Shown: positions 7,537 to 64,000, numbered from the stretch's first letter. The stretch: DNA of 64,000 nucleotides from Octopus sinensis (GCF_006345805.1 NC_043005.1:62186001-62250000), one strand, 5' to 3'. A program made the numbers and translations. Notes: a model not told the origin generated them from the letters alone.

Positions 7537-8726
7537 CAGGGTGTTTAAGGTATTTGAGGACATAGCTTTTTGGGTCATTGCTGCACTTTTTGCTAACTCT
7601 GTATAATTTTTGTTTCTGAAAATAATAATGGCAGACCCTCAGCTTACTCAAGAAATGAGTTATGCTGTTATCATGGTTATAAAGGCTGAGCATAGAAATT
7701 TAGAAATATCTTGATTTTAAAAGTTGCCGTATCTTTTGTCTGTAAAGTTTGTAAGGAGCTAGAGACTGAAGATGGAAACATATCACCAGTATCAAAGTAT
7801 AAAAAGCATTCTAAATGCTCTGAAATCATCAGAACACCTGAATTTATCCAGCAAGTTCAACAGAATTTATCCAGAAAGTTCATGAGGTCAATTGCAAAAG
7901 ATCTCTATATGTCAGAAGGAACAGTCAGAAATGTTGTCCATGAAGACATCAGATATAAGTCTTATATGATGAAAAAAGGTCAAGTTGTCTGAAAAAGCTA
8001 AAGAAAATCACTATATCAGATGTAAAAGACTCTTAAATAAACTGAGAAATCCAGCAGAAGATTTGATTTGTGTTTTCTCAAATGAGAAAAATTTCAACCA
8101 ACATCAAAAAGTTAACGGAAGAAATGACAGATGGTTATGTGCAGATCCTTCTGAAGTTCCAAGTGTTATGCATACAAAATTTCCTGTAACTGTCATGGTT
8201 TTAGGAATTGTCAGCAATGAAGGACATGTGATGCCTCCCTACTTCTTTCCACAAGTTAACTCTGCCACCTACACTGAGGTCCTGGAAATAATTGTTAAGC
8301 CCTGGATAGACAGTGTATGCAATGGAAGGCCATATGTGTTTCAGTAAGACTGCACTATTACACATGACTCTAGTAACACAGGAATGGATGGCTGAACATT
8401 TTCATGATCATATAGCTCCTAACATTTGGCTTCCTGATTCCCCAGATCTCAATCTATTGGACTATTATATGAGGAGCGTTGTTGAGAGAGAAAGGTCAAT
8501 GAACATGTCCATAACACCAAAGATTCTTTGAAAGTTGCCATAGTCAGAGTAATGTCCAAAATGAACAAGGACCACTTGATTCAAGCATGTAGATGATTTA
8601 GATCTCATACAGAAGCAGCTGTTGAAGCTGAAGATGGCTTTATTGAATATCATTATAGCATTTTTTGCTAAATATATTATCTGTTATTATATATCTGTTT
8701 TTTTTTTATAAACATAAATCTGTCCT

Positions 8727-31387: not shown

Positions 31388-31605
31388 CTTTCTTGTAACT
31401 GTTTTCCAGGAATAAGTCCAGCACGGAGATTGCTATCTCCTTCTTTACGTGCCTGCCACCAAAGTGGATCTTCTTGACTAACAATCTGAAGAACATCTCC
31501 CTTCTGGAAAGGAAGACCTGCTTCTGGGCAAGGAATAATGGGGTCATCAAAGGGATCATAATCAAATAGAGCTCGAAGTCTTATTTGAGTTGAACGATAA
31601 TATGG
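31388..31605 (-). CDS. MPP7: MAGUK p55-subfamily (MPP7-like) coding exon: SH3 domain
   Basis: Minus-strand acceptor tttttcag|CCA at 31606-31608 and donor AG|gtaaaa at 31386-31387. 218 nt, phase 0 to 2. Encodes [72 protein letters not shown](R), matching the MPP7/MPP3 SH3 signature (ALFDY..D..IPC.EAGL.F.KGD.LQI.SQ.D..WWQA..E.D.N.RAGLIP.K..QER). Confidence 0.95.
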
Positions 31606-33085: not shown

Positions 33086-33478
33086 GAATATCAGTTTGAT
33101 AATGGCAGTTATTTTACTAAATTCTTCATTTTTCAAATTAATTGAAACAAAAGTTGTGTTTCTCAACAGAAATATGGCAACTAACATAGGATCAAAACAT
33201 GCAGCAAATATATTGTTTGTCCTGAGATTAAAATTATTATTTCCTTTTGTTTACTTAGTTGGAATACTATGTTAGACATTAGCCAAAAGAAGAACATCTA
33301 TGTAGTCATTTGACTTATGAGTATTAGCAACCAAATTTTTCTTACCCTACCATTCAGACTATGCTGCCAACAGTAATGCTTATTTATTTTAATTGTTTTG
33401 AATTACTCATGTAGCATCATGTAGATTATTTACCTTATTTACATTCGACGGATATTTGTCCTCATCTTGTTTGTTGTT

Positions 33479-33524
33479 AACACAACGTTTTGGCTGATAT
33501 ACCTTCCAGCCTTCTTCAGGTGTC
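33479..33524 (-). ncRNA. Minimal type I hammerhead ribozyme motif, G12>A mutated
   Basis: GACAC CUGAAGA A GGCUG-gaagguauau-CAGCC AAAAC GUU GUGUU; the core GAAA is mutated to AAAA (CpG-type transition). Confidence 0.7.
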
Positions 33525-33572
33525 TTGGGGGGAATTTCGAACATGGGTTCTCATTCCTAAGGTATTTTTGGA

Positions 33573-33603
<31 letters not shown>

Positions 33604-33692
33604 GTTGTTGGTGTTCAGGTCACTGCTTGGAATCGAACTTGGAATCTTGGGGTTAGTACCCCACACTCTTAACCACTATGCCATATTCCCGT

Positions 33693-33765
33693 GGGCATAT
33701 GGTGTAGTGGTTATGAGCATGGGCTACTAACCCCAAGATTCCAAGTTCGATTCCAGGTAGTGACC
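33693..33765 (+). other. tRNA-Arg-like Pol III head (not a functional tRNA)
   Basis: GGGCATA TGGTGTAGTGG (A box) ... CTACTAA CCCCA AGATT CCAAG TTCGATT CCAGG (B box). The layout parallels eukaryotic tRNA-Arg(ACG) (…CTACGGA TCAGA AGATT CCAGG TTCGACT CCTGG) as recalled, but the stems are broken. Confidence 0.7.
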
Positions 33766-33836
33766 TGGATAATAATAATAATAACAACATCGAAAAATAC
33801 CTTAGGAATGAGAACCCAGGTTCAAAATTTCCCCAA

Positions 33837-33879
33837 GACACCTGAAGAAGGCTGGAGGGTATAGCAGCCAAAACGTGTT
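33837..33879 (+). ncRNA. Degenerate hammerhead motif (G12>A, 3-nt deletion at the cleavage triplet)
   Basis: GACAC CUGAAGA A GGCUG-gaggguauag-CAGCC AAAAC GUGUU. Confidence 0.55.
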
Positions 33880-34687
33880 AACAACAAACAAGATGAGGAC
33901 AAATATCTGTCGAATGTAAATAACGTAGATAATGTACATAATTCCTTATCTCTTAAATATAGAACTGTAGTAGCATGTAGCTTTGAGGTTTCAATGATGT
34001 ACTCATTTCTTTTTAGAATGACATTGTAGGGCTGGTGTGAGAGGCTCAATATGGCCAATTTGAACATAAAACAGGTACATTATTTGGGCCAGATATGGCC
34101 AGTTTAAATGCTTAAAGGTAAAATCACATGTAGCATTTTTAAAAAGAGAAGAACATCTTGAACAAAGTTGTTTAAGATATACCAAAGTTATGAGATAATA
34201 GGATAGATATAGTAATAGGTGGAATGCCTTTGATCATAGGTCTGCTTAACTGCAGTTGATCTGGGACTAAGCAACAATAACTGGATATACAGTAGTCTCA
34301 TTTTGCAACAGGACGTTTAATTCAAAATAAATAACAATTTCAGACAGGATATCAATACTTTTTATAAATATCTCAATTGGAAGTACTAACAATTTTAATA
34401 AAGATGTTTGAAAAAAAAAAAATGAAGCAAAATAAATAAACAAAAGTAATAAAAAACAAAACCAAAAAACAGCAAAAATAACTCAGTATTCCCTTCTATC
34501 AAATAAAAGAATTTGTTATCAAGTCATGTGCTAATTTTATTAGCTACTAAAATACTGCATGAATTTGTTTTTTTTCTAATATGAACTTGAAAAATTTATT
34601 ACCTCTATATAAATTGAGACATTAAATCTGCATCAATTACCATTAAAAACATATTCTTTTTGTCTCTCTCATACAATCACACACACA

Positions 34688-34930: not shown

Positions 34931-35621
34931 CACTTCTCTGTTTCCCACCACCATAATAAAATCATTATTTAAATCCAATAATGGAAAATATTCTATGATA
35001 AGTTTACATTTGGTGAAATCAGTATAAATTGAATTAGTGTAATGTTATGGAAGTAAATATTAGATAAATATTTCTTTTTTAATTACAGGAAGTTTTCATT
35101 CAAACATTTTTTTAAAGCTATTCATTCAACATAAATTGTAATATAAATGGGTTTATGAGAATCTATACTTTTAGCTATTATCATAGAAACATTAAGCTGA
35201 TTATCAACAAATTTAAGCAATTTTCAATGAGAGAGTCTCTACATGGTCAGACGATTGGCAAGAAATAGCAACTAAATATTCCTCAAGTGACATCCTACTT
35301 TGGAAACATGGGTTTCGATCCCAGCACTGCCAGTGATACTTTGATGTTTTGAGCCAAATAGGAAGATTCTACATGTTTACTTAACCTGATGAAAACCATA
35401 GCCAAATCATCTTCACATCATATATTGAATACAGACACAGTTCATATAATCCAGTATAACTCTAAAAGGTCAGTATAGTTGTAACTGGGATGCCATTGAT
35501 AGTAAATCTGTTCAACTAGGATTGACTTGGAGCTAAGCAGAGGTAACTAGTATACAGGAAGGAAGTTTCTTTGTGGCTGGCTGATCTAGTAGAAATGACA
35601 GTCTAATCTCTTTCAAATCAT

Positions 35622-35764
35622 TATTTACATTTGACGGATATTTGTCCTCATCTTGTTTGTTGTTAACACATTTTGGCTGCTATACCCTCCAGCCTTCATC
35701 AGATGTCTTGAGGGGGAAATTTCAAACCTGGGTTCTCATTCCTAAGGTATTTTTTGATGTGTTG

Positions 35765-35800
<36 letters not shown>

Positions 35801-35880
35801 TCACTGCCTGGAATTGAACTCAGAATCTTGGGGTTAGTAGCCTGTGCTCTTAACCACTACGCCACATGCCTGTGGGCAAT
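35622..35880 (-). mobile_element. Single tRNA-like + (AAT)n + hammerhead unit (3' UTR/pseudo-LTR of the adjacent Penelope element)
   Basis: Same sequence as one arm of the palindromes. tRNA-like segment 35799-35871; degenerate hammerhead 35665-35707 (GACAU CUGAUGA A GGCUG…CAGCC AAAAU GUGUU). Lies directly 3' of the Penelope ORF stop on the same strand. Confidence 0.88.
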
Positions 35881-35893
35881 TATGGAGTGAATT

Positions 35894-36420
35894 TTAGGGC
35901 TTCTTCCTTAATACCAGTTCCCATATGATACTCATATCTGCACTTGGTCTGCTTAGGAGGTTGTTGTGCTGCTTCTTTTAGTTTTTGTATTTTCCAGTGG
36001 TGTTCTCTGTCTATCATTTTAACTTCATTCCCACTGGGAGGGGGGGGGTTGTCTCCATCTCTCCATACATGATCAGCTATACCCGATATATCAATATCTC
36101 CTCATGTCACAGCTTTGTGATGTGCACTTTGGTGGGGTGGCATGTTTTGCCTTTGTATAACCTACCACAGCTGCATGGGATGGAGTACAGTTCTTAGTCA
36201 TATTCTCTTCTATTGGTGGTTTTACTCTAAGAAAATATTTGCAAAGTGTATTACTCTTGAATACTGTCCTGATGTCATATGGGCTACATATCTTTTGTAT
36301 CTTTTCAGAGAGGCCTTTCACATAGGGTAGTCAGACTGTGGACAGTTTATTGGTTTCATCCTGTCTTTTCTTCATAATTGGAGTGGATAGTATGTTTTGG
36401 GGGTAGTTGTTGCTTGATAG
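35894..36420 (-). mobile_element. Penelope-like element ORF remnant: RT thumb/linker plus GIY-YIG endonuclease
   Basis: Across frameshifts: LSSNNYPQNILS..*LPYVKGLSEKIQKICSPYDIRTVFKSN..RVKPPIEENMTKNC/IPCSCGRLYKGKT…HKAVT*GDIDISGIADHVWRD…EVKMIDREHHWKIQKLKEAA/NNLLSRPSADMSIIWELVLRKKP*. NYP, LPYV, VY.IPC.C..Y.GET, S.IA.H and R..KEA are the PLE signatures. Confidence 0.9.
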
Positions 36421-36481
36421 AAATGATCAATAACAATCTATTAAGCAATAACTTGGTGGAGTATTCCAGTTCTATATTTAA

Positions 36482-42505: not shown

Positions 42506-42983
42506 CTTGCACATACACACATGTATACAATTATGTGCTTTGACTGCAGCATTAGAGACATTTAGCCCTTATTTCTAGCAATGTCGGTGTTTTTAACACC
42601 CTCTGTCATATTTAATGACGATTATAGTTTTCCCTTTTAGTACACACACACACACATGTGTGTGTTTGTGTGTGTGTGCGTATAAGCATACACCTGCATA
42701 TTACTAGTTAGAAAGAGATTATGATACAAAAATTAGATTGTCTACTTTCATAAAAGTGTGTCTCTCTCTCCCACTATGACATCAAATGAGGCATTTAAGT
42801 TATGGCTCTCCCACCATCAACTGATTTCCTAACCAGTTCTTTCATGTGTTGTTTGGTTTTCCTCTGCCATAGGTAACTTCTTTTGTTAGCATACAATACT
42901 TTACATGTAACTGGGGTGCCATCTCTATCACATTTCCACACAAGTGCAGCCATCTGCCTTTTCAGTTTCTAAACATTTGCTAT

Positions 42984-44238
42984 TGTTACGGAATCACCCG
43001 TCGTCGCCCGTCCCGAACAGCTTACACAAGTTCCGCCACGGAACCCAAAGAGGCGGAGAGAGGAGATACAGATAGATACTGCCACAACCTCAACAGCACA
43101 GAGATACAGAGGCACAACCCGAGATACAACCCAAAGAGGCAAGGCAACAACTGGCAACACTGGCTTATATTCAAACAACAGTTTATACGACAATCAATTG
43201 CTACACATCAAATACATTTAAGGCAAACAACAAATCAATACATCATACGGTACACCACAGATCAAAGCATTTAACAACATGCATGTAACAATATAACAGT
43301 GTTCAGTAACGACACAACAAGTCCAGATCAAATAATGTTCACGATACGTCACAGTCCAATCAGAACACTTCGATACATTATACAATGTTCGTATCACAAC
43401 AGTTCACGTTACAATTCAACAAGTCCTTTACTCAATTCACAATGTTCTTTATCGACTACATCGACAGAGTCCTTCTTTTTCTCTCTTCTTTTCTTTTACA
43501 TCGTGACACATATCAATGCACAACACATACCTTAATTCCTAACTGAATCGCCAGTGTCCCATTCTGCACTCATCTCTTAATACTGCTAAATCCTCTGAAT
43601 ACTCTGCTAATTCCCCTCTGTGCATATTCCAATCGCTTGCTCCTAGGCCTCCTCGCATCCCAGCTCGCTCCCAGGAATTCCAACGCTTGCTCCTTAAATC
43701 CAAGGTTCCATCTACTCGCTCTGACCTCCAGAGTCCGTCTGTCTTCCTCGAGGGCCGGCCAGCGACTACAGGATCCGTCTGTGTTCCTCGACGACCGCTC
43801 AACGACTGCCCTTCTTGACGACCAGCTACCAACTACCCAGATCCGTCCTTCCTGACGACCAACTGCGAACTACCAGACCTCACTTCGTCTCTGTCCTTCT
43901 TCCACTCCCCTCATCTCCCTCTGTCTATATCGCTCTTACCCTTTCTAACTGCCCTGGTCCTTATACCCTATCTATATCGCCTGCTGTCTCTTAGCCTCTC
44001 CATCCGTCCCTTTAGCCTTATACTCTATCTCTATTTGCTCTCAGCCCTTAATCTGTCTTCCTCTTTACTTCTTCAAGGGGTGCTCAGAATGACCTCCAAT
44101 CGACCGCACAAGGTCAGAAAGGTCCCTCCAAAACCCATTAGTCTTCCGTGAACAAAAGACTGTCACTTTTCTACTAGACATGCCGGAACCATAATTCCAA
44201 TGTGGGTCACCGGGAAATGTACCAGCTAAAACGTAACA
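42984..44238 (-). mobile_element. Solo LTR (Gypsy-like), 1,255 bp, with 4-bp TSD
   Basis: Termini TGTTACG…CGTAACA (7-bp inverted repeat). TSD CTAT at 42980-42983 and 44239-44242. CpG-rich, no coding capacity. Orientation inferred only from a TATA-like ggtataagg on the minus strand (~43960). Confidence 0.88.
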
Positions 44239-45694
44239 CTATGTTAATTAATCTCTTAGTAATTAAGAAAAGAAAATGATTATTTGTGTAAGATTACTTC
44301 ACCTGAGATGAGTCTGTTCAGAAAACCAAAACTAATTTGTAAACAAGTGCAAAGCTACAGTCATATTTTACTACAACAATAGCAGTAACAGAAATATAAC
44401 TACTTGGAACAGTCATCAATATCACAGAGGCACAAAAGGAGATTGTAGAAGAACTTAGGCTAACAATATCAGTGTTAATTGCATCACTAATTAATATTCC
44501 CTCTTCTTTCAATCTTAGTACAGTTTATATCTTCTGGCTGACTTTCATAGTTAGCAGCATGTTCAGTAGGATATATGTTTCCTAATGATAGTAATTTGAG
44601 CAAGAAATAAGAATTGTGGAACCCATGTTTTTCCAAAGTCCATTACAACTCCAGAGCAATGAAATAATTAATGTTGACTGGTAATAAAAAATGGATTGTA
44701 GACTTAAAAAATTTTTAGAGCTTACATTTTATTTTTTACTATACTTAAATTATAGTTCTGATAAAATGTATTTTTCTGAATAAATGTTTAGATCAAAGCA
44801 TTATAAGCCAACTCAATAGTGCTCAACCCACAGTACAGGATGTTGGACGAATGAGGTCTTGTGCTAGTTAAGTTATGAAACCCTTGATTTTGAACGTCAG
44901 GCATACATGCTCAGGAAATTCATCGTTAAAATTTGGGGTTGGGGTTGGGGAAGAAGATGGGCTCCACCGCCCTGCCACTGGTCAACAGGGCCCTGTGCTT
45001 AAGCACACCTAAGCACAATAGTAAATCTGGCACTGTCAACCCTATAGACTTAGGATCATAAATCTGGAGCTTAACATGGCTTCCATGGCATATAATTGAC
45101 TGGTATTACAACACTCTTCATCTGAATGTGACACTAAGCCATCACAAGGTTGACTTCCAAGCTAATACTGGAACTCATTTATAGCTGAGTGGAGTGCAGG
45201 AATGTGAAATGAAGAGTTTTGCTCAAGAACACAATGCCTTGCTCAGTCAAAGAATTGAAACCACTATCTTATGATCATGAGTGTAATACCCTAACCACTA
45301 GGCTATGTGCCTATACAACATGAAATAAGTTTACAGTGAGCTGAATCACAGAACAATTTTGACTCCTCTTATTAGTTTTTTTGTGGTAACTATTGAGTAA
45401 TTAGGATGATATAGTGTTTTGTTGGTTCCTATTACTTGTAATATGTTAGTGAGTAGAGACTAGACAATTAGTCAATTGTATTTTTTCAAAGCAGTATCTA
45501 CAAATACAGCAGCTGTGGTTGCTCTTCATATATAAACAAGCAGATAAGATATACTTTGAGTTAAAATTCTGTTTTTCTTAATGCTTCTAAAGTAGACATA
45601 AGTTAAAGTGACTGTTTAACTAGCTGCATACATTACACATAAAAAACAAGTCTTGTAGATAGTCATCTCCATCCCACCCTACCCCCCAAAAGTG

Positions 45695-53459: not shown

Positions 53460-53680
53460 TAAGGTGGAGAGCTGGCAGAATCGTTAGCATGTCAGGCAAA
53501 ATGTTTAGTGGCATTTTGCTAGTCCTTATGTTCTGATTTCAAGTTCCACCGTGGTTCACTTTTCCTTTCATCCTTTCATAGTCAATAAAATAAGTACCAG
53601 TTGAGTACCAGGGTCAATATAATTGACTTACCCGCTCTCGTAAAATTGCTGGCCCCCTGCCAAAATTTGAAACCCTTATT
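53460..53680 (+). mobile_element. Family C SINE copy with tRNA-like head
   Basis: ggtggagagc TGGCAGAATCG ttagcatg … ttcaagttcc … tttcatcctttc … ccaaaatttgaaacc. Confidence 0.8.
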
Positions 53681-61760: not shown

Positions 61761-62255
61761 TTATGTCTGTATGTGTTTGTTTATATATATATAAAAATAT
61801 GAACTATTTCTCACAGTAATATACAATTTAGATTTTAAGAATATAATAAAAAATATTGTTAGTGAGGAATCTGTGATGTGTTTTTAGAAATGTCGAACAA
61901 AAATGAAAAAAAAAAAAACAAGAAAGAAGTGAGAAGAATATATAATATGAATGGAAAGTAATATCAGAAGTAGAACAAACATCAGTCTAAAGTTCACTAA
62001 CAACATAGACTTTGAATCAAGTAGAATTAAACTATGAACAGAAATACTAAACAGTGTAATTCTTTCTACAGCATCTGAAATTTTGGGGAAGGGGATTAGT
62101 TGATCAAATTGACTACAGTACTCAGCTGGTACTTATTTTTATTGAAGCTGACTACAGTGCTCAGCTGCAGTTCTATATTTAAGAGATGAGGAAGTATGTA
62201 CATTATTTACATTATTTACAATTGACGGATATTTGTCCCCATCTTGTTTGTTGTT

Positions 62256-62301
62256 AACACGACGTTTCGGCTGATATACCCTCCAGCCTTCATCAGGTGT
62301 C
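62256..62301 (-). ncRNA. Intact minimal type I hammerhead ribozyme (Penelope-type), GUC cleavage site
   Basis: 5'-GACAC CUGAUGA A GGCUG gaggguauau CAGCC GAAAC GUC^GUGUU-3'. Stem I GACAC/GUGUU, core CUGAUGA and GAAA, 5-bp stem II, loop-less palindromic stem III (ACGU). Predicted cut between 62261 and 62260. One extra A follows A9. Confidence 0.8.
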
Positions 62302-62556
62302 TTGGGGAAATTTCGAACCTGGGTTCTCATTCCTAATGTATTTTTCGATGTTGTTGTTGTTGTTGTTGCTGTTGTTATTATTATTCAGGTAACTGCCTGG
62401 AATCGAACTCAGAATCTTGGGGTTAGTAGCCCATGCTCTTAACCACCACACCATATGCCCACGGGCATACGGTGTAGTGACCTGAATAATAATAATAATA
62501 ATAATAGCAGTGAAAAATACCTTAAGAATGAGAACCCAGGTTTGAAATTTCCCCAA

Positions 62557-62599
62557 GACACCTGATGAAGGCTGGAAGGTATATCAGCCAAAACGTGTT
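62557..62599 (+). ncRNA. Degenerate hammerhead motif (G12>A, 3-nt deletion)
   Basis: GACAC CUGAUGA A GGCUG gaagguauau CAGCC AAAAC GUGUU. Confidence 0.55.
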
Positions 62600-64000
62600 A
62601 ACAACAAACAAGATGAGGACAAATATCTGTTGAATGTAAATAGTGCTCAGCTTGTACTTATTTTTATTGAAGATGAAAGGCAAAATCGACCTCACCAGAA
62701 TTTGAACTCAGAATGTAAAGCCAGAAGAAAATGCCATTGAGCATTTTGTTGGGTCTGCTAGTAATTCTGCCTATGCTGCCTTAGAAACACTACACAGTGT
62801 GACAGTAATGAAAATTTTCTTAAGAAACATTAATTAGAACTATAGGAGATAAACTAAAACACAAGGAATACAGATCAAAACCTTACAAGAATAACAATAT
62901 GAGATCCTCAATACACAATATACAGTTTAATGGATTTCAAGAAAGAGAAACAGAACTGTTTTGGTTTCAGTTATTCTATAATTTTGTTTTTAATGTTTAT
63001 TCATGTTAGCAATCTCCCATCAGTTATGAAAACATGGCATCATGTTATCTTACTCATTTACACTTTAGCCAATTAATTTCCTGAGAAGTGATACCACCTC
63101 AAAGCTTTCTGAACAAAAAAAATCAATACACAAATTTGTTCTTGTACATTATGATAGTTTTGTCCAATAGATTACTTCAAATTAATATAAAATTAGATAA
63201 AGTATTGCCACAATTTTAGAGCTTCACTACTTCACTGATGATACGATTTCACTTTTCTGTGGAAGTGAGAGTAAAAACACTTTTCATAAGTTCAGTGATT
63301 TATAGAAATATGAGACTTAAAGTAACTTAACATAATAAAGCAAAACATTGTTTGCTTGGTTAAGTTGCACGTACTTTAGATCCCCCTTCTGATACATTTA
63401 CTCATCAGTTTTATATTTGATTTTCTATGCTAGCATATGTAAGATCAATATGTATCGATGCATTATTTTACTGCTGGATCCCTTTCTATCACTAAGTATT
63501 ACATATTTTTCAAGTAATTGAATTTTCATTCTATTTATCTTTGAAAGAGCAAAGTTATGGTATAATTTTATTAGCAGAGAATATCTACAAATGTTACTGT
63601 TTTAAGATTCAACATTTTCATGCAAGGGTGTGGAACGTAAACATTCATATAGGCAAACACATACACACACACGTGCATGCACAAACATACATACACTTGT
63701 ACATACACACACGCACACAAACATACACACACACACACTACGAGCTTCTATACAGTTTCTGTCTACCAATTCCACTCAGCCTTAAGTTTCAGTAGAAGAT
63801 ACCAAAGGTACCACACAGTGTGACATAACTGCCTATACCTCAAATATTGTATATAAATAATAAATTGATACAAAGAATAAACGGTGCCATTTCAACTATA
63901 CCTGTCCTATGTATATAGATAAATGATAATAAAATTAAATAGGTCTGACATGTTAATTTAATGAACCTGAAGATTTCAAAGTTACCTTAATTGCAAAAAA

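What the first reader, a model, noticed from the sequence alone, without database searches (positions are those of the whole stretch)
62256..62301. One fully intact hammerhead (GUC site) on the sense strand of the MPP7-like pre-mRNA
Seen: of five hammerhead motifs in the window only this one keeps C3-A9, G12-A14, A15.1-U16.1 and an NUH (GUC) triplet. Its arm also keeps an intact B box (GAGTTCGATTCC) and a near-consensus A box. Known: loop-less palindromic stem III (ACGU) hammerheads from PLEs generally need to dimerise to cleave. Inference: this may be an active or recently active copy. If the host transcription unit extends past 62.3 kb, intronic self-cleavage could affect co-transcriptional splicing unless the palindrome hairpin masks it.
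Basis: partly seen in the sequence, partly recalled or inferred. Interest (0 to 1): 0.75.

Follow-up and report, generated by a model that had tools for sequence, protein, structure and literature searches.

The report
Relic Penelope-type hammerhead in octopus intron
The motif is a real, complete-looking minimal hammerhead ribozyme, but it lies in an old copy of a short Penelope-derived retroelement within what is probably a large intron of an octopus MPP7-like gene. It needs a partner molecule to cut and is locked in a long hairpin here, so it is most likely an inert relic of a known kind.

Summary
On the minus strand, 62301→62256 reads GACAC-CUGAUGA-A-GGCUG(loop)CAGCC-GAAA-CGUC|GUGUU. This is the only site in the window that fits a minimal-hammerhead descriptor (0 of 400 simulated windows). 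It is one of five copies of a ~270-300 nt element. The other four are dead: all have G12→A at a CpG, and three also lost 3 nt at the cleavage site.

The element is the 3'UTR of a Penelope-like retroelement (PLE). Copy C directly follows a GIY-YIG endonuclease remnant, and homologous PLEs from another animal assembly carry the same box A/B module and hammerhead in their 3'UTR. Head-to-head pairs, a one-sided 31-nt tail and a ~35-nt target duplication are also PLE hallmarks.

The "extra A" is a conserved feature of PLE hammerheads, not a defect. Helix III has no loop, so cleavage would need a dimer.

The only MPP7-like exon in the window (SH3, 31605-31388, minus) lies 30.7 kb downstream on the same strand, so the motif is probably intronic and sense. 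In that transcript it is fully paired with the antisense of its inverted partner (-269 kcal/mol, z = -21). The copy is ~4% diverged, so it is not recent.

Verdict: an ordinary relic. A side lead is the promoter-like tRNA-like head in this PLE lineage.

The parts
62256..62301 (-). Intact minimal type I hammerhead motif. Helix I is GACAC/GUGUU. The core is CUGAUGA plus one bulged A. Helix II is GGCUG/CAGCC with a 10-nt loop. Then come GAAA and the loop-less helix III palindrome ACGU. C17 is at 62261, with cleavage predicted between 62261 and 62260.
   Evidence: Sequence. Unique descriptor match, with 0 of 400 simulations matching. Homologous to the hammerhead in PLE 3'UTRs of loci L001-L004.
62165..62461 (-). 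Copy D of the PLE-3'UTR-derived short element. It consists of a 5-nt leader, a tRNA-like head, an (AAT/AAC)n stretch, the hammerhead, the tail and a 31-nt extension ending in TTAAATATAGAACTG.
   Evidence: BLAST; alignments A1 and A2; tail motif.
62443..62453 (-). A-box-like motif TGGTGTGGTGG, with two departures from TRGCNNAGTGG.
   Evidence: Sequence. Intact versions occur in copies A, B and C at tRNA-like spacing from the B box, and in 0 of 300 simulations.
62399..62410 (-). B box GAGTTCGATTCC.
   Evidence: Sequence.
62462..62642 (+). Copy E, the inverted (head-to-head) partner of D. It has a 54-nt deletion of the tRNA-like head and a dead hammerhead at 62557-62599 (G12→A, 3-nt deletion removing C17).
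   Evidence: It pairs base for base with D's hammerhead in the folded minus-strand transcript.
62117..62151 (.). Left copy of the ~35-nt direct repeat flanking the D/E unit, read as a target-site duplication. The target was the tail of another SINE.
   Evidence: the repeat finder family D3, 91% identity.
62642..62676 (.). Right copy of the flanking direct repeat.
33419..33690 (-). Copy A, left arm of a second head-to-head pair. Its hammerhead is dead through G12→A only (CUGAAGA...AAAACGUU).
33688..33970 (+). Copy B, right arm of the second pair. It has G12→A and the 3-nt deletion, and it carries the 31-nt tail extension.
35619..35893 (-). Copy C. The same element is here contiguous with a PLE reading frame, so it is the PLE 3'UTR. 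Its hammerhead is dead.
   Evidence: The junction sequence AAAATTCACTC...CAGG..CATGTGGCGTA is homologous to PLE 3'UTRs in L001-L004.
35894..36331 (-). Frameshifted remnant of a PLE C-terminal GIY-YIG endonuclease (...YSIPCSCGRLYKGKT...), with its stop codon at 35896-35894.
   Evidence: 162 homologues, E down to 4e-37, one named GIY-YIG endonuclease by JGI. 50% identity and E=1e-52 to P0027. Pfam is negative.
36467..36481 (-). TTAAATATAGAACTG at the 5' boundary of the truncated PLE. The same 15-mer ends the tail extensions of copies B and D.
   Evidence: 3 exact matches against 0.05 expected.
31388..31605 (-). SH3-domain exon of the MPP7-like (MAGUK p55) host gene, with a polypyrimidine-AG acceptor and a GT donor. 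It is the only recognisable exon in the window.
   Evidence: Pfam SH3_2/SH3_1. 64% identity to recalled human MPP7 residues 233-296, E=2e-22. Splice sites. tblastx against orthologous loci L005 and L006.

Best explanation
The motif is the minimal hammerhead carried in the 3'UTR (pseudo-LTR region) of a cephalopod Penelope-like retroelement. It survives here in one arm (D) of a head-to-head pair of short, non-autonomous copies of that 3'UTR.

Shown:
- The motif is complete.
- It is homologous to hammerheads sitting downstream of PLE endonuclease reading frames.
- The copies have PLE-type insertion anatomy.
- The copies are old.
- In a minus-strand transcript the motif is predicted to be buried in a ~200-bp hairpin.

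Inferred:
- In the life cycle of the element, the hammerhead acts only when two copies pair through the palindromic ACGU. Each core then cuts the other strand.
- A single short RNA stays uncut. This keeps the 3' tail that the element presumably needs to prime its reverse transcription.
- At this locus the copy inserted more than 10 million years ago into an intron of the MPP7-like gene and has been decaying neutrally.
- It stays intact by chance, because its three CpGs have not yet mutated.
- It does not cleave the pre-mRNA. It has no dimer partner, and it is sequestered co-transcriptionally by the upstream antisense arm.
For: Motif and chance: unique descriptor match, with none in 400 simulated windows.

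Family: five copies, of which four are inactivated by CpG-type G12→A with or without a 3-nt deletion.

PLE origin:
- Copy C follows the stop codon of a GIY-YIG endonuclease remnant.
- That remnant has 162 homologues and is 50% identical to P0027.
- In L001-L004 the same order is found: endonuclease ORF, box A/B-like module, hammerhead, tail.
- These 3'UTRs align throughout with the octopus copies.

Insertion anatomy as described for PLEs in PMC8557442:
- An inverted adjacent copy.
- A 30-40-bp tail at one end only (copies B and D).
- A long flanking duplication.

Motif features listed for PLE minimal hammerheads in PMC4209133, all present:
- G10.1-C11.1.
- Palindromic 15.2-16.2.
- Pairs on opposite strands 100-700 bp apart.

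Age: D is 4.1% from the consensus and pairwise identities are 88-93%. The duplication is 91% identical. CpG retention in D is 7 of 10.

Masking:
- MFE is -269.2 kcal/mol, z = -21.5.
- Every core nucleotide is paired to 62557-62599, with unpaired probability about 0.
- Alone, G5-G8 pair with C15.2-C17 (P about 0.85).
- The double-hammerhead fold (-21.3 kcal/mol) is less stable than two monomer folds (-28.4).

Host: the SH3 exon is on the same strand and is the only exon found in the window.
Against: - No cleavage or expression data exist for this locus, and folding energies ignore tertiary contacts, helicases and ADAR unwinding.
- D is the least diverged copy and keeps all three hammerhead CpGs, which weak selection or local hypomethylation could also explain.
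- Transcripts of other family members elsewhere in the genome, not visible here, could supply dimer partners in trans.
- Only five octopus copies and five copies from one other assembly were available. Covariation support for the helices is not significant.
- The PLE assignment of the endonuclease remnant rests on homology and motif, not on a Pfam hit.
- No reverse-transcriptase part is present in the window.
- The upstream exons of the host gene were not seen, so "intronic" is an inference.
Confidence: 0.8

Rival explanations
1. The hammerhead is an active intronic ribozyme that self-cleaves the MPP7-like pre-mRNA and influences its splicing or abundance.
For: The core and both helices are complete. 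It is on the same strand as the SH3 exon and probably intronic. [quoted passage not shown]
Against: Helix III has no loop, so a partner is needed. Single PLE minimal hammerheads showed no detectable cleavage, and dimers only weak cleavage (PMC4209133). The core is fully paired to the already-transcribed antisense arm. There is no sign of constraint: the copy is 4% diverged, its CpG retention is ordinary, and the four sister copies are dead. Intron cleavage need not disturb splicing in any case (from my own knowledge: exon tethering, Dye et al. 2006).
Confidence: 0.04
2. Copy D is a live source gene: a Pol III-transcribed SINE-like master copy that is still producing new insertions, kept intact for that reason.
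For: It is the lowest-divergence copy (4.1%) with the highest CpG retention. Its B box is intact. All four short arms share the same 5' end, 5 nt before the tRNA-like +1.
Against: The A box is mutated at two consensus positions. The copy is embedded in a hairpin-forming palindrome. It carries nine private substitutions. Its flanking duplication has already diverged by 9%. No younger daughter copies are seen in the window.
Confidence: 0.05
3. What matters at this locus is the ~200-bp intronic hairpin formed by D and E (and likewise by A and B), as a double-stranded RNA substrate for ADAR editing or small-RNA production. On this reading the hammerhead is incidental.
For: Very stable predicted hairpin, z = -21.5. 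There are two such palindromes on the same strand, within what is probably the same intron. Coleoid cephalopods edit RNA heavily (from my own knowledge).
Against: Nothing here tests editing or small RNAs. Such hairpins are a routine by-product of PLE insertion (PMC8557442). The arms are diverging freely (84-91% identity), so there is no sign of selection for pairing.
Confidence: 0.1
4. The motif is a chance match in AT-rich DNA.
For: A loose pattern (CTGATGA...GAAA) is only about three times enriched (6 found, 2 expected). No Rfam hit.
Against: The full descriptor matched in 0 of 400 simulations. The motif is homologous position by position with hammerheads in PLE 3'UTRs of another species.
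Confidence: 0.01

Closest known systems
Minimal hammerheads of Penelope-like elements (Cervera and de la Pena 2014, PMC4209133; Lunse, Weinberg and Breaker 2017)
   Same: Type I topology and a helix I of 5 bp. One unpaired nucleotide between A9 and G10.1. G10.1-C11.1 is present. Positions 15.2-16.2 are palindromic with no loop 3, so a dimer is required. The motif lies in the PLE 3'UTR or pseudo-LTR. Many dispersed, truncated and opposite-strand paired copies exist.
   Different: Helix II is 5-6 bp, against 7-8 bp in the Schistosoma families. This lineage has a box A/B tRNA-like module upstream of the hammerhead in the same UTR, which I did not find described in the papers I could search.
Schistosoma Sm-alpha / Sj-alpha SINE-like retroposons with hammerheads (Ferbeyre et al. 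1998; Laha et al. 2000; summarised in PMC6765202)
   Same: A short non-coding retroposon that combines a Pol III-type promoter module with a hammerhead, and whose helix III is too weak for efficient monomeric cleavage.
   Different: Sm-alpha carries a canonical hammerhead with loop-loop contacts and occurs in tandem arrays. The octopus element has a minimal hammerhead, occurs dispersed or head-to-head, and is demonstrably the 3'UTR of a PLE. No sequence comparison with Sm-alpha was made here.
Metazoan non-LTR retrozymes (Cervera and de la Pena 2020, PMC7229834; Li, Clavereau and Pollet 2026 preprint, 10.64898/2026.07.22.740005)
   Same: Non-autonomous hammerhead-bearing repeats thought to be mobilised by PLEs and related to the PLE pseudo-LTR.
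   Different: Retrozymes are head-to-tail tandem repeats with classical type I hammerheads. They accumulate as circular RNAs and are reported to lack promoters (PMC7761336). Here there is no tandem array, the hammerhead is minimal, and a promoter-like head is present.
Conserved intronic hammerheads of amniotes (Rfam HH9/HH10; from my own knowledge)
   Same: A hammerhead in the sense strand of an intron of a protein-coding gene.
   Different: Those are single-copy, deeply conserved and able to cleave as monomers, with a real helix III. This one is a decaying repeat copy with no helix III loop and does not match those Rfam models.
CChMVd (+) hammerhead with an extra A between A9 and G10.1 (De la Pena and Flores 2001, cited in PMC4209133)
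   Same: The extra nucleotide sits at the same core position and is compatible with catalysis.
   Different: That is a viroid type III hammerhead and is unrelated in origin.

Membership tests
Hammerhead ribozyme (catalytic core, Hertel numbering) | C3-U4-G5-A6-N7-G8-A9 box | tested here: met
   CUGAUGA at 62296→62290.
Hammerhead ribozyme (catalytic core, Hertel numbering) | G12-A13-A14, the A15.1-U16.1 pair partners, and H17 at the cleavage site | tested here: met
   GAAA at 62268→62265, U16.1 at 62262, C17 at 62261.
Hammerhead ribozyme (catalytic core, Hertel numbering) | Helices I and II flanking the core | tested here: met
   Helix I has 5 bp (one G-U) and helix II has 5-6 bp. Pairing probabilities are 0.7-0.99 in the stand-alone element.
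Hammerhead ribozyme (catalytic core, Hertel numbering) | A closed helix III that allows folding as a monomer | tested here: not met
   A15.1-C-G-U16.1 are contiguous with no loop. The monomer MFE pairs G5-G8 with C15.2-C17 instead.
Hammerhead ribozyme (catalytic core, Hertel numbering) | Match to a curated Rfam hammerhead covariance model | tested here: not met
   No hit at gathering score, nor at E<=10 in 1 kb or 226 nt. Minimal variants were originally found with descriptors rather than such models (PMC4209133).
Hammerhead ribozyme (catalytic core, Hertel numbering) | Site-specific Mg2+-dependent self-cleavage | not testable with these tools
   Needs in vitro transcription and cleavage assays.
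PLE-associated minimal hammerhead | [quoted passage not shown] | tested here: met
   A at 62289. It is present in all five octopus copies and in four of the five copies from L001-L004.
PLE-associated minimal hammerhead | G10.1-C11.1 closing pair | tested here: met
   G-C in 9 of 10 aligned copies.
PLE-associated minimal hammerhead | Palindromic 15.2-16.2 with no loop 3 | tested here: met
   ACGU in copies D and A and in four of the five L001-L004 copies.
PLE-associated minimal hammerhead | Location in the 3'UTR or pseudo-LTR of a PLE | tested here: met
   Copy C follows the endonuclease stop codon. The arrangement is the same in L001-L004.
PLE-associated minimal hammerhead | Compensatory changes in the helices across family members | tested here: inconclusive
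   There is one U-A to C-G change in helix II, with a U-G intermediate. 83% of cells are paired, but this is no better than shuffles.
Penelope-like element (EN+) | C-terminal GIY-YIG endonuclease | tested here: met
   Motif YSIPCSCGRLYKGKT. There are 162 homologues, one named GIY-YIG endonuclease, and 50% identity with E=1e-52 to P0027. Caveat: no Pfam hit for the remnant or its homologues.
Penelope-like element (EN+) | Telomerase-like reverse transcriptase upstream of the endonuclease | tested here: inconclusive
   Absent from the window, where the copy is truncated at about 36.48 kb. An RVT_1 reading frame lies in related locus L004, though downstream of its 3'UTR rather than upstream of its endonuclease.
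Penelope-like element (EN+) | Inverted 5'-truncated copy adjacent, and a 30-40-bp tail at one end (PMC8557442) | tested here: met
   Head-to-head pairs A/B and D/E. Inverted copies in L002 and L004. A 31-nt extension on B and D only, with its last 15 nt also at the 5' edge of the PLE remnant.
tRNA-derived SINE | Internal box A and box B at tRNA-like spacing | tested here: met
   TRGYNNA..GG followed 44 nt later by RGTTCRANNCY in copies A, B and C only. It matched in 0 of 300 simulated windows.
tRNA-derived SINE | Head recognisable as a tRNA (cloverleaf) | tested here: not met
   ARAGORN finds none. The Rfam tRNA model does not hit at E<=10. The acceptor stem is not complementary on inspection.
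tRNA-derived SINE | 3' part shared with an autonomous partner | tested here: met
   The whole element, head included, equals the PLE 3'UTR.
tRNA-derived SINE | A fixed 5' end of its own, and Pol III transcription | tested here: inconclusive
   All four short arms start at the same point (CCCAC|GGGCAT), seen in two independent insertions. That is only two events, and transcription cannot be tested here.
Non-LTR retrozyme | Head-to-tail tandem repeats with classical type I hammerheads | tested here: not met
   Only solo or inverted copies are found. The hammerhead is minimal, with no helix III.

The most novel reading that the evidence does not exclude
A cephalopod PLE lineage carries, as a conserved part of its 3'UTR, a tRNA-like box A/box B module just upstream of its minimal hammerhead. 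In octopus this UTR has become a separate ~270-300-nt SINE-like element with its own fixed 5' end, 5 nt before the tRNA-like +1, which would fit a Pol III start.

That would be a promoter-bearing non-autonomous derivative of a PLE. It would parallel Schistosoma Sm-alpha, and it would contrast with retrozymes, which are reported to lack promoters. The dimer-only hammerhead would spare single short RNAs, whose 3' tail the element presumably needs for reverse transcription.
Probability: 0.4. Interest if true: 0.5.

Novelty: new member of a known kind. Interest (0 to 1): 0.25.

Why it matters
For the host gene it probably does not matter: this is a masked, partner-less relic.

Its value is as a clean, dissectable example of how PLE hammerheads are scattered through animal genomes. 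One window shows the autonomous remnant, the short derivatives, the head-to-head insertion products, the one-sided tail and CpG-driven decay of the catalytic core.

The side observation links two things so far described separately. If the box A/B module is a working Pol III promoter shared by the PLE 3'UTR and its short derivatives, it connects PLE or retrozyme hammerheads with tRNA-type SINEs. It would also give a testable reason why these hammerheads are built to cut only as dimers.

Tried and rejected
- Rfam at gathering score over the whole window, and at E<=10 over 1 kb and 226 nt: no hammerhead or tRNA hit. The listed miRNA and lncRNA matches are artefacts of the palindrome and microsatellites.
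- ARAGORN on the window and on four loci: nothing.
- Pfam on the endonuclease remnant and on four homologues: no family.
Regex searches for PDZ and guanylate-kinase motifs found only the SH3 exon.
- I tried to harvest more octopus copies through the spurious reading frame across copy D. This gave one hit only (UniRef Octopus bimaculoides A0A0L8FV75, 81% identity), and its DNA is not on record.
- Two metagenome scans for the hammerhead sequence found nothing.
- Covariation counting on 10 copies was not significant.
- I considered that copy C might be a SINE inserted by chance next to a PLE. I rejected this because the junction is homologous to PLE 3'UTRs of another species.
- I considered the C-rich block at 42.95-44.25 kb as a possible internal promoter that would place the hammerhead outside the transcription unit. 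I found no evidence either way.
- The Lunse et al. 2017 paper could not be read.

Full report
**The observation**

Read on the minus strand, 62301→62256 is GACAC-CUGAUGA-A-GGCUG-GAGGGUAUAU-CAGCC-GAAA-C-G-U-C|GUGUU. All invariant hammerhead positions are present. Helix I has 5 bp, and helix II has 5-6 bp closed by G10.1-C11.1. The cleavage triplet is GUC, with the scissile bond between 62261 and 62260.

Helix III consists only of A15.1-C-G-U16.1 with no loop. That is a four-base palindrome which can pair only with a second copy.

I wrote a descriptor for this architecture. It matches only this site in the window on either strand, and it matched none of 400 simulated windows with the same dinucleotide transition frequencies. 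A loose pattern alone is only about three times enriched, so the whole architecture is what makes the match significant.

No Rfam hammerhead model matches at gathering score, nor at E<=10 in 1 kb or 226 nt. Minimal hammerheads of this type were originally found with structure descriptors (PMC4209133).

**The five copies**

BLAST of the surrounding sequence against the window finds five copies of a ~270-300-nt unit:

| Copy | Coordinates | Strand | Hammerhead |
|---|---|---|---|
| A | 33419-33690 | - | dead: G12→A only; triplet GUU |
| B | 33688-33970 | + | dead: G12→A, 3-nt CGT deletion |
| C | 35619-35893 | - | dead: G12→A, 3-nt CGT deletion |
| D | 62165-62461 | - | intact |
| E | 62462-62642 | + | dead: G12→A, 3-nt CGT deletion |

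The unit is made of these parts in order (alignment):
- a head with an A box (TGGYGTAGTGG) and a B box (GAGTTCGATTCC);
- a variable (AAT/AAC)n stretch;
- a conserved ~55-nt segment;
- the hammerhead;
- a tail.

G12→A is the CpG change CCG→CCA. The 3-nt deletion in B, C and E removes C17.

**What the element is**

Copy C is not free-standing. Read on the minus strand, it follows directly a frameshifted reading frame ending ...LLSRPSADMSIIWELVLRKKP*, with its stop codon at 35896-35894. Upstream of that lie ...LPYVKGLSEKIQKICSPYDIRTVF... and ...YSIPCSCGRLYKGKT....

- A stitched translation finds 162 homologues, E down to 4e-37, one of them named a GIY-YIG superfamily endonuclease by JGI.
- It is 50% identical (E=1e-52) to P0027 over its whole length, including the C-terminus.
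- Pfam does not recognise either the remnant or its homologues. The assignment to the C-terminal endonuclease of a Penelope-like element (PLE) therefore rests on the motif, the homologues, an RVT_1 reading frame next to one homologue, and the features below.

Four homologous loci were fetched from ENA assembly ERZ21867824, an unidentified animal with 34-37% GC. Downstream of the endonuclease stop codon they show the same order of parts:
- an A-rich run;
- the segment AAAATTCACTCTGAATTG...CAGGACACATGGCGTAACGGTTA, a box-A-like motif;
- GGTTCAATCC, a box-B-like motif;
- a spacer;
- ACAC-CUGAAGA-A-GGCCGG...CAGCC-GAAA-CGUU-GUGG;
- a similar tail.

These 3'UTRs align with the octopus copies along their whole length, including the 25 nt between copy C's stop codon and its head. 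The "element" is therefore the 3'UTR of a PLE. The hammerhead is the one that PLEs are known to carry in that region (PMC4209133, PMC8557442).

The features those authors list for metazoan PLE minimal hammerheads are all present:
- G10.1-C11.1;
- palindromic 15.2-16.2;
- a short helix I;
- frequent pairs on opposite strands 100-700 bp apart.

Covariation support is weak. Helix II shows U-A in octopus against C-G in L004, with a U-G intermediate in L003. With ten decayed copies this is no better than shuffles.

**Insertion anatomy**

A/B and D/E are head-to-head pairs joined at the same 8-nt centre, CCC(GT/AC)GGG, at 33688-33695 and 62458-62465.

- One arm of each pair (A, E) carries the native 5-nt leader CCCAC seen in the PLE-linked copy C. 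The other arm (B, D) starts at GGGCAT.
- This is what a jump of the reverse transcriptase from the 5' end of the RNA onto complementary DNA, through the GGG/CCC microhomology, would give. That is inference.
- B and D, but not their partners, carry a further 31 nt ending in TTAAATATAGAACTG.
- The same 15-mer marks the 5' edge of the truncated PLE at 36467-36481. That is three exact matches against 0.05 expected.
- The D/E unit is flanked by a ~35-nt direct repeat of 91% identity (62117-62151 and 62642-62676), lying inside the tail of another SINE.

An inverted adjacent copy and a 30-40-bp tail at one end of the unit are described as typical of PLE insertions (PMC8557442). Loci L002 and L004 show the same inverted arrangement.

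**Age**

The copies differ by 4.1% (D) to 7.5% (E) from their five-copy consensus, and pairwise identity is 88-93%.

- The arms of a pair are no more alike than copies at different loci. This is expected if all inserted at about the same time from similar sources.
- With the calibration used for O. vulgaris repeats (Jukes-Cantor 0.065 is about 18 million years; PMC13282606), this is of the order of 10-20 million years.
- D keeps 7 of 10 inferred ancestral CpGs. A keeps 6 of 10, B 4 of 9, C 2 of 9 and E 2 of 7. Keeping all three CpGs inside the hammerhead is therefore about a one-in-three event for D.
- One intact motif among five copies needs no selection. "Recently active" is not supported.

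**Host gene**

The only recognisable exon in the window is an SH3 exon at 31605-31388 on the minus strand.

- It has a polypyrimidine-AG acceptor and a GT donor.
- It hits Pfam SH3_2 and SH3_1.
- It is 64% identical to residues 233-296 of human MPP7. I recalled that sequence from memory and used it only as a probe (E=2e-22).
- Neither that probe nor tblastx with two orthologous loci from another assembly (L005, L006) finds PDZ, L27 or guanylate-kinase exons anywhere in the window.

In MAGUK p55 proteins the L27 and PDZ domains precede SH3. Their exons should therefore lie upstream on the minus strand, beyond coordinate 64000. The hammerhead, 30.7 kb upstream of the SH3 exon on the same strand, is then inside an intron of at least 32 kb. 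This is an inference and no transcript was seen.

The organism is an octopus. The reading frame across copy D has one database relative, an Octopus bimaculoides UniRef entry with 81% identity.

**Would it cut?**

Three lines of evidence say no.

1. The monomer cannot form helix III.
   - Alone, the 57-nt motif and the 299-nt element fold with helices I and II. However, G5-G8 pair with C15.2-C17 (P about 0.85).
   - The domain-swapped double hammerhead (-21.3 kcal/mol) is less stable than two monomer folds (-28.4) or an extended duplex (-32.4).
2. In a minus-strand transcript the antisense of arm E is made first and is complementary to D.
   - The 541-nt stretch folds into a ~200-bp hairpin of -269.2 kcal/mol (z = -21.5).
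   - Every core nucleotide is paired to 62557-62599, with unpaired probability about 0.
   - Only the three nucleotides G-U-C bulge out, because E lacks them.
3. Single PLE minimal hammerheads showed no detectable cleavage in vitro, and dimers only low activity (PMC4209133, PMC6765202).

The likely native logic, which is inferred, is that the motif cuts only in multimeric or paired RNAs. In a single short RNA, cleavage at C17 would remove the 3' tail that the element presumably needs to prime reverse transcription.

**Comparison and novelty**

The finding is a new (octopus) member of a well-described kind, the PLE minimal hammerhead.

- It resembles Schistosoma Sm-alpha in combining a Pol III-type promoter module with a hammerhead. 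It differs in hammerhead type and in genomic arrangement.
- It is not a non-LTR retrozyme, because there are no tandem arrays and no classical hammerhead.
- It is unlike the conserved intronic hammerheads of amniotes.

The one point I did not find in the searchable literature is the box A/B module conserved in a PLE 3'UTR, together with short copies that all start 5 nt before its +1 position. Reviews state that metazoan retrozymes seem to lack promoters (PMC7761336). The tRNA nature of the head is not confirmed by ARAGORN or Rfam, and only two independent short-copy insertions were available, so this remains a lead.

Noticed in passing
window 35862-35925 (-); L001 4790-4920; L004 3890-4010: The PLE 3'UTR itself contains the box A/box B tRNA-like module. 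It is conserved between the octopus copy and PLEs of an unrelated assembly (ERZ21867824). All four short octopus arms begin at the same nucleotide, 5 nt before the tRNA-like +1.
   Followed up: partly
window 62590-62594, 33870-33874, 35668-35672 versus 62260-62265 and 33484-33489: The same 3-nt CGT deletion at the cleavage site is found in B, C and E but not in A or D, so each head-to-head pair has one arm with it and one without. This could be recurrent slippage in CGTCGT, or two source variants. It is unexplained.
   Followed up: no
window 33953-33967 (+), 62168-62182 (-), 36467-36481 (-): The 15-mer TTAAATATAGAACTG ends the one-sided 31-nt tail of copies B and D and also marks the 5' edge of the truncated PLE (3 matches, 0.05 expected). 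It looks like the PLE "tail" described by Craig et al. 2021.
   Followed up: partly
window 62090-62165 and 62643-62800: The D/E pair inserted into the tail of another tRNA-type SINE in minus orientation, with B-box-like GAGTTCAAATTC at about 62698-62709. A related piece lies at 53582-53636.
   Followed up: no
window 42950-44250: A C-rich (+ strand), relatively CpG-rich block of up to 54% GC in a 33% GC window, with long open frames on both strands. There is no Pfam hit for two of the frames. Its nature is unknown (repeat, or possibly a promoter-like island).
   Followed up: partly
window 7696-8528 (+): Three consecutive open frames that look to me like a decayed Tc1/mariner-type transposase. 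Pfam gave no transposase hit for the one frame tested.
   Followed up: partly
window 62349-62520: Rfam low-score "miRNA precursor" matches (MIR1222, mir-885) are artefacts of the palindrome centre and its flanking (TTG)n/(AAT)n runs.
   Followed up: yes
L002 2749-3129 (-) and 4786-5126 (+); L004 2439-2860 (-) and 3786-4215 (+): In the other assembly too, PLE remnants are bracketed by inverted copies of the hammerhead-bearing 3'UTR. In L004 an RVT_1 reading frame follows downstream, which suggests a partial tandem.
   Followed up: partly
L006 14745-14900: In the orthologous MPP7-like locus of assembly ERZ25767047, a guanylate-kinase exon lies only ~4.5 kb downstream of the SH3 exon. In the octopus window none is found within 31 kb, so the octopus introns are much larger.
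   Followed up: no
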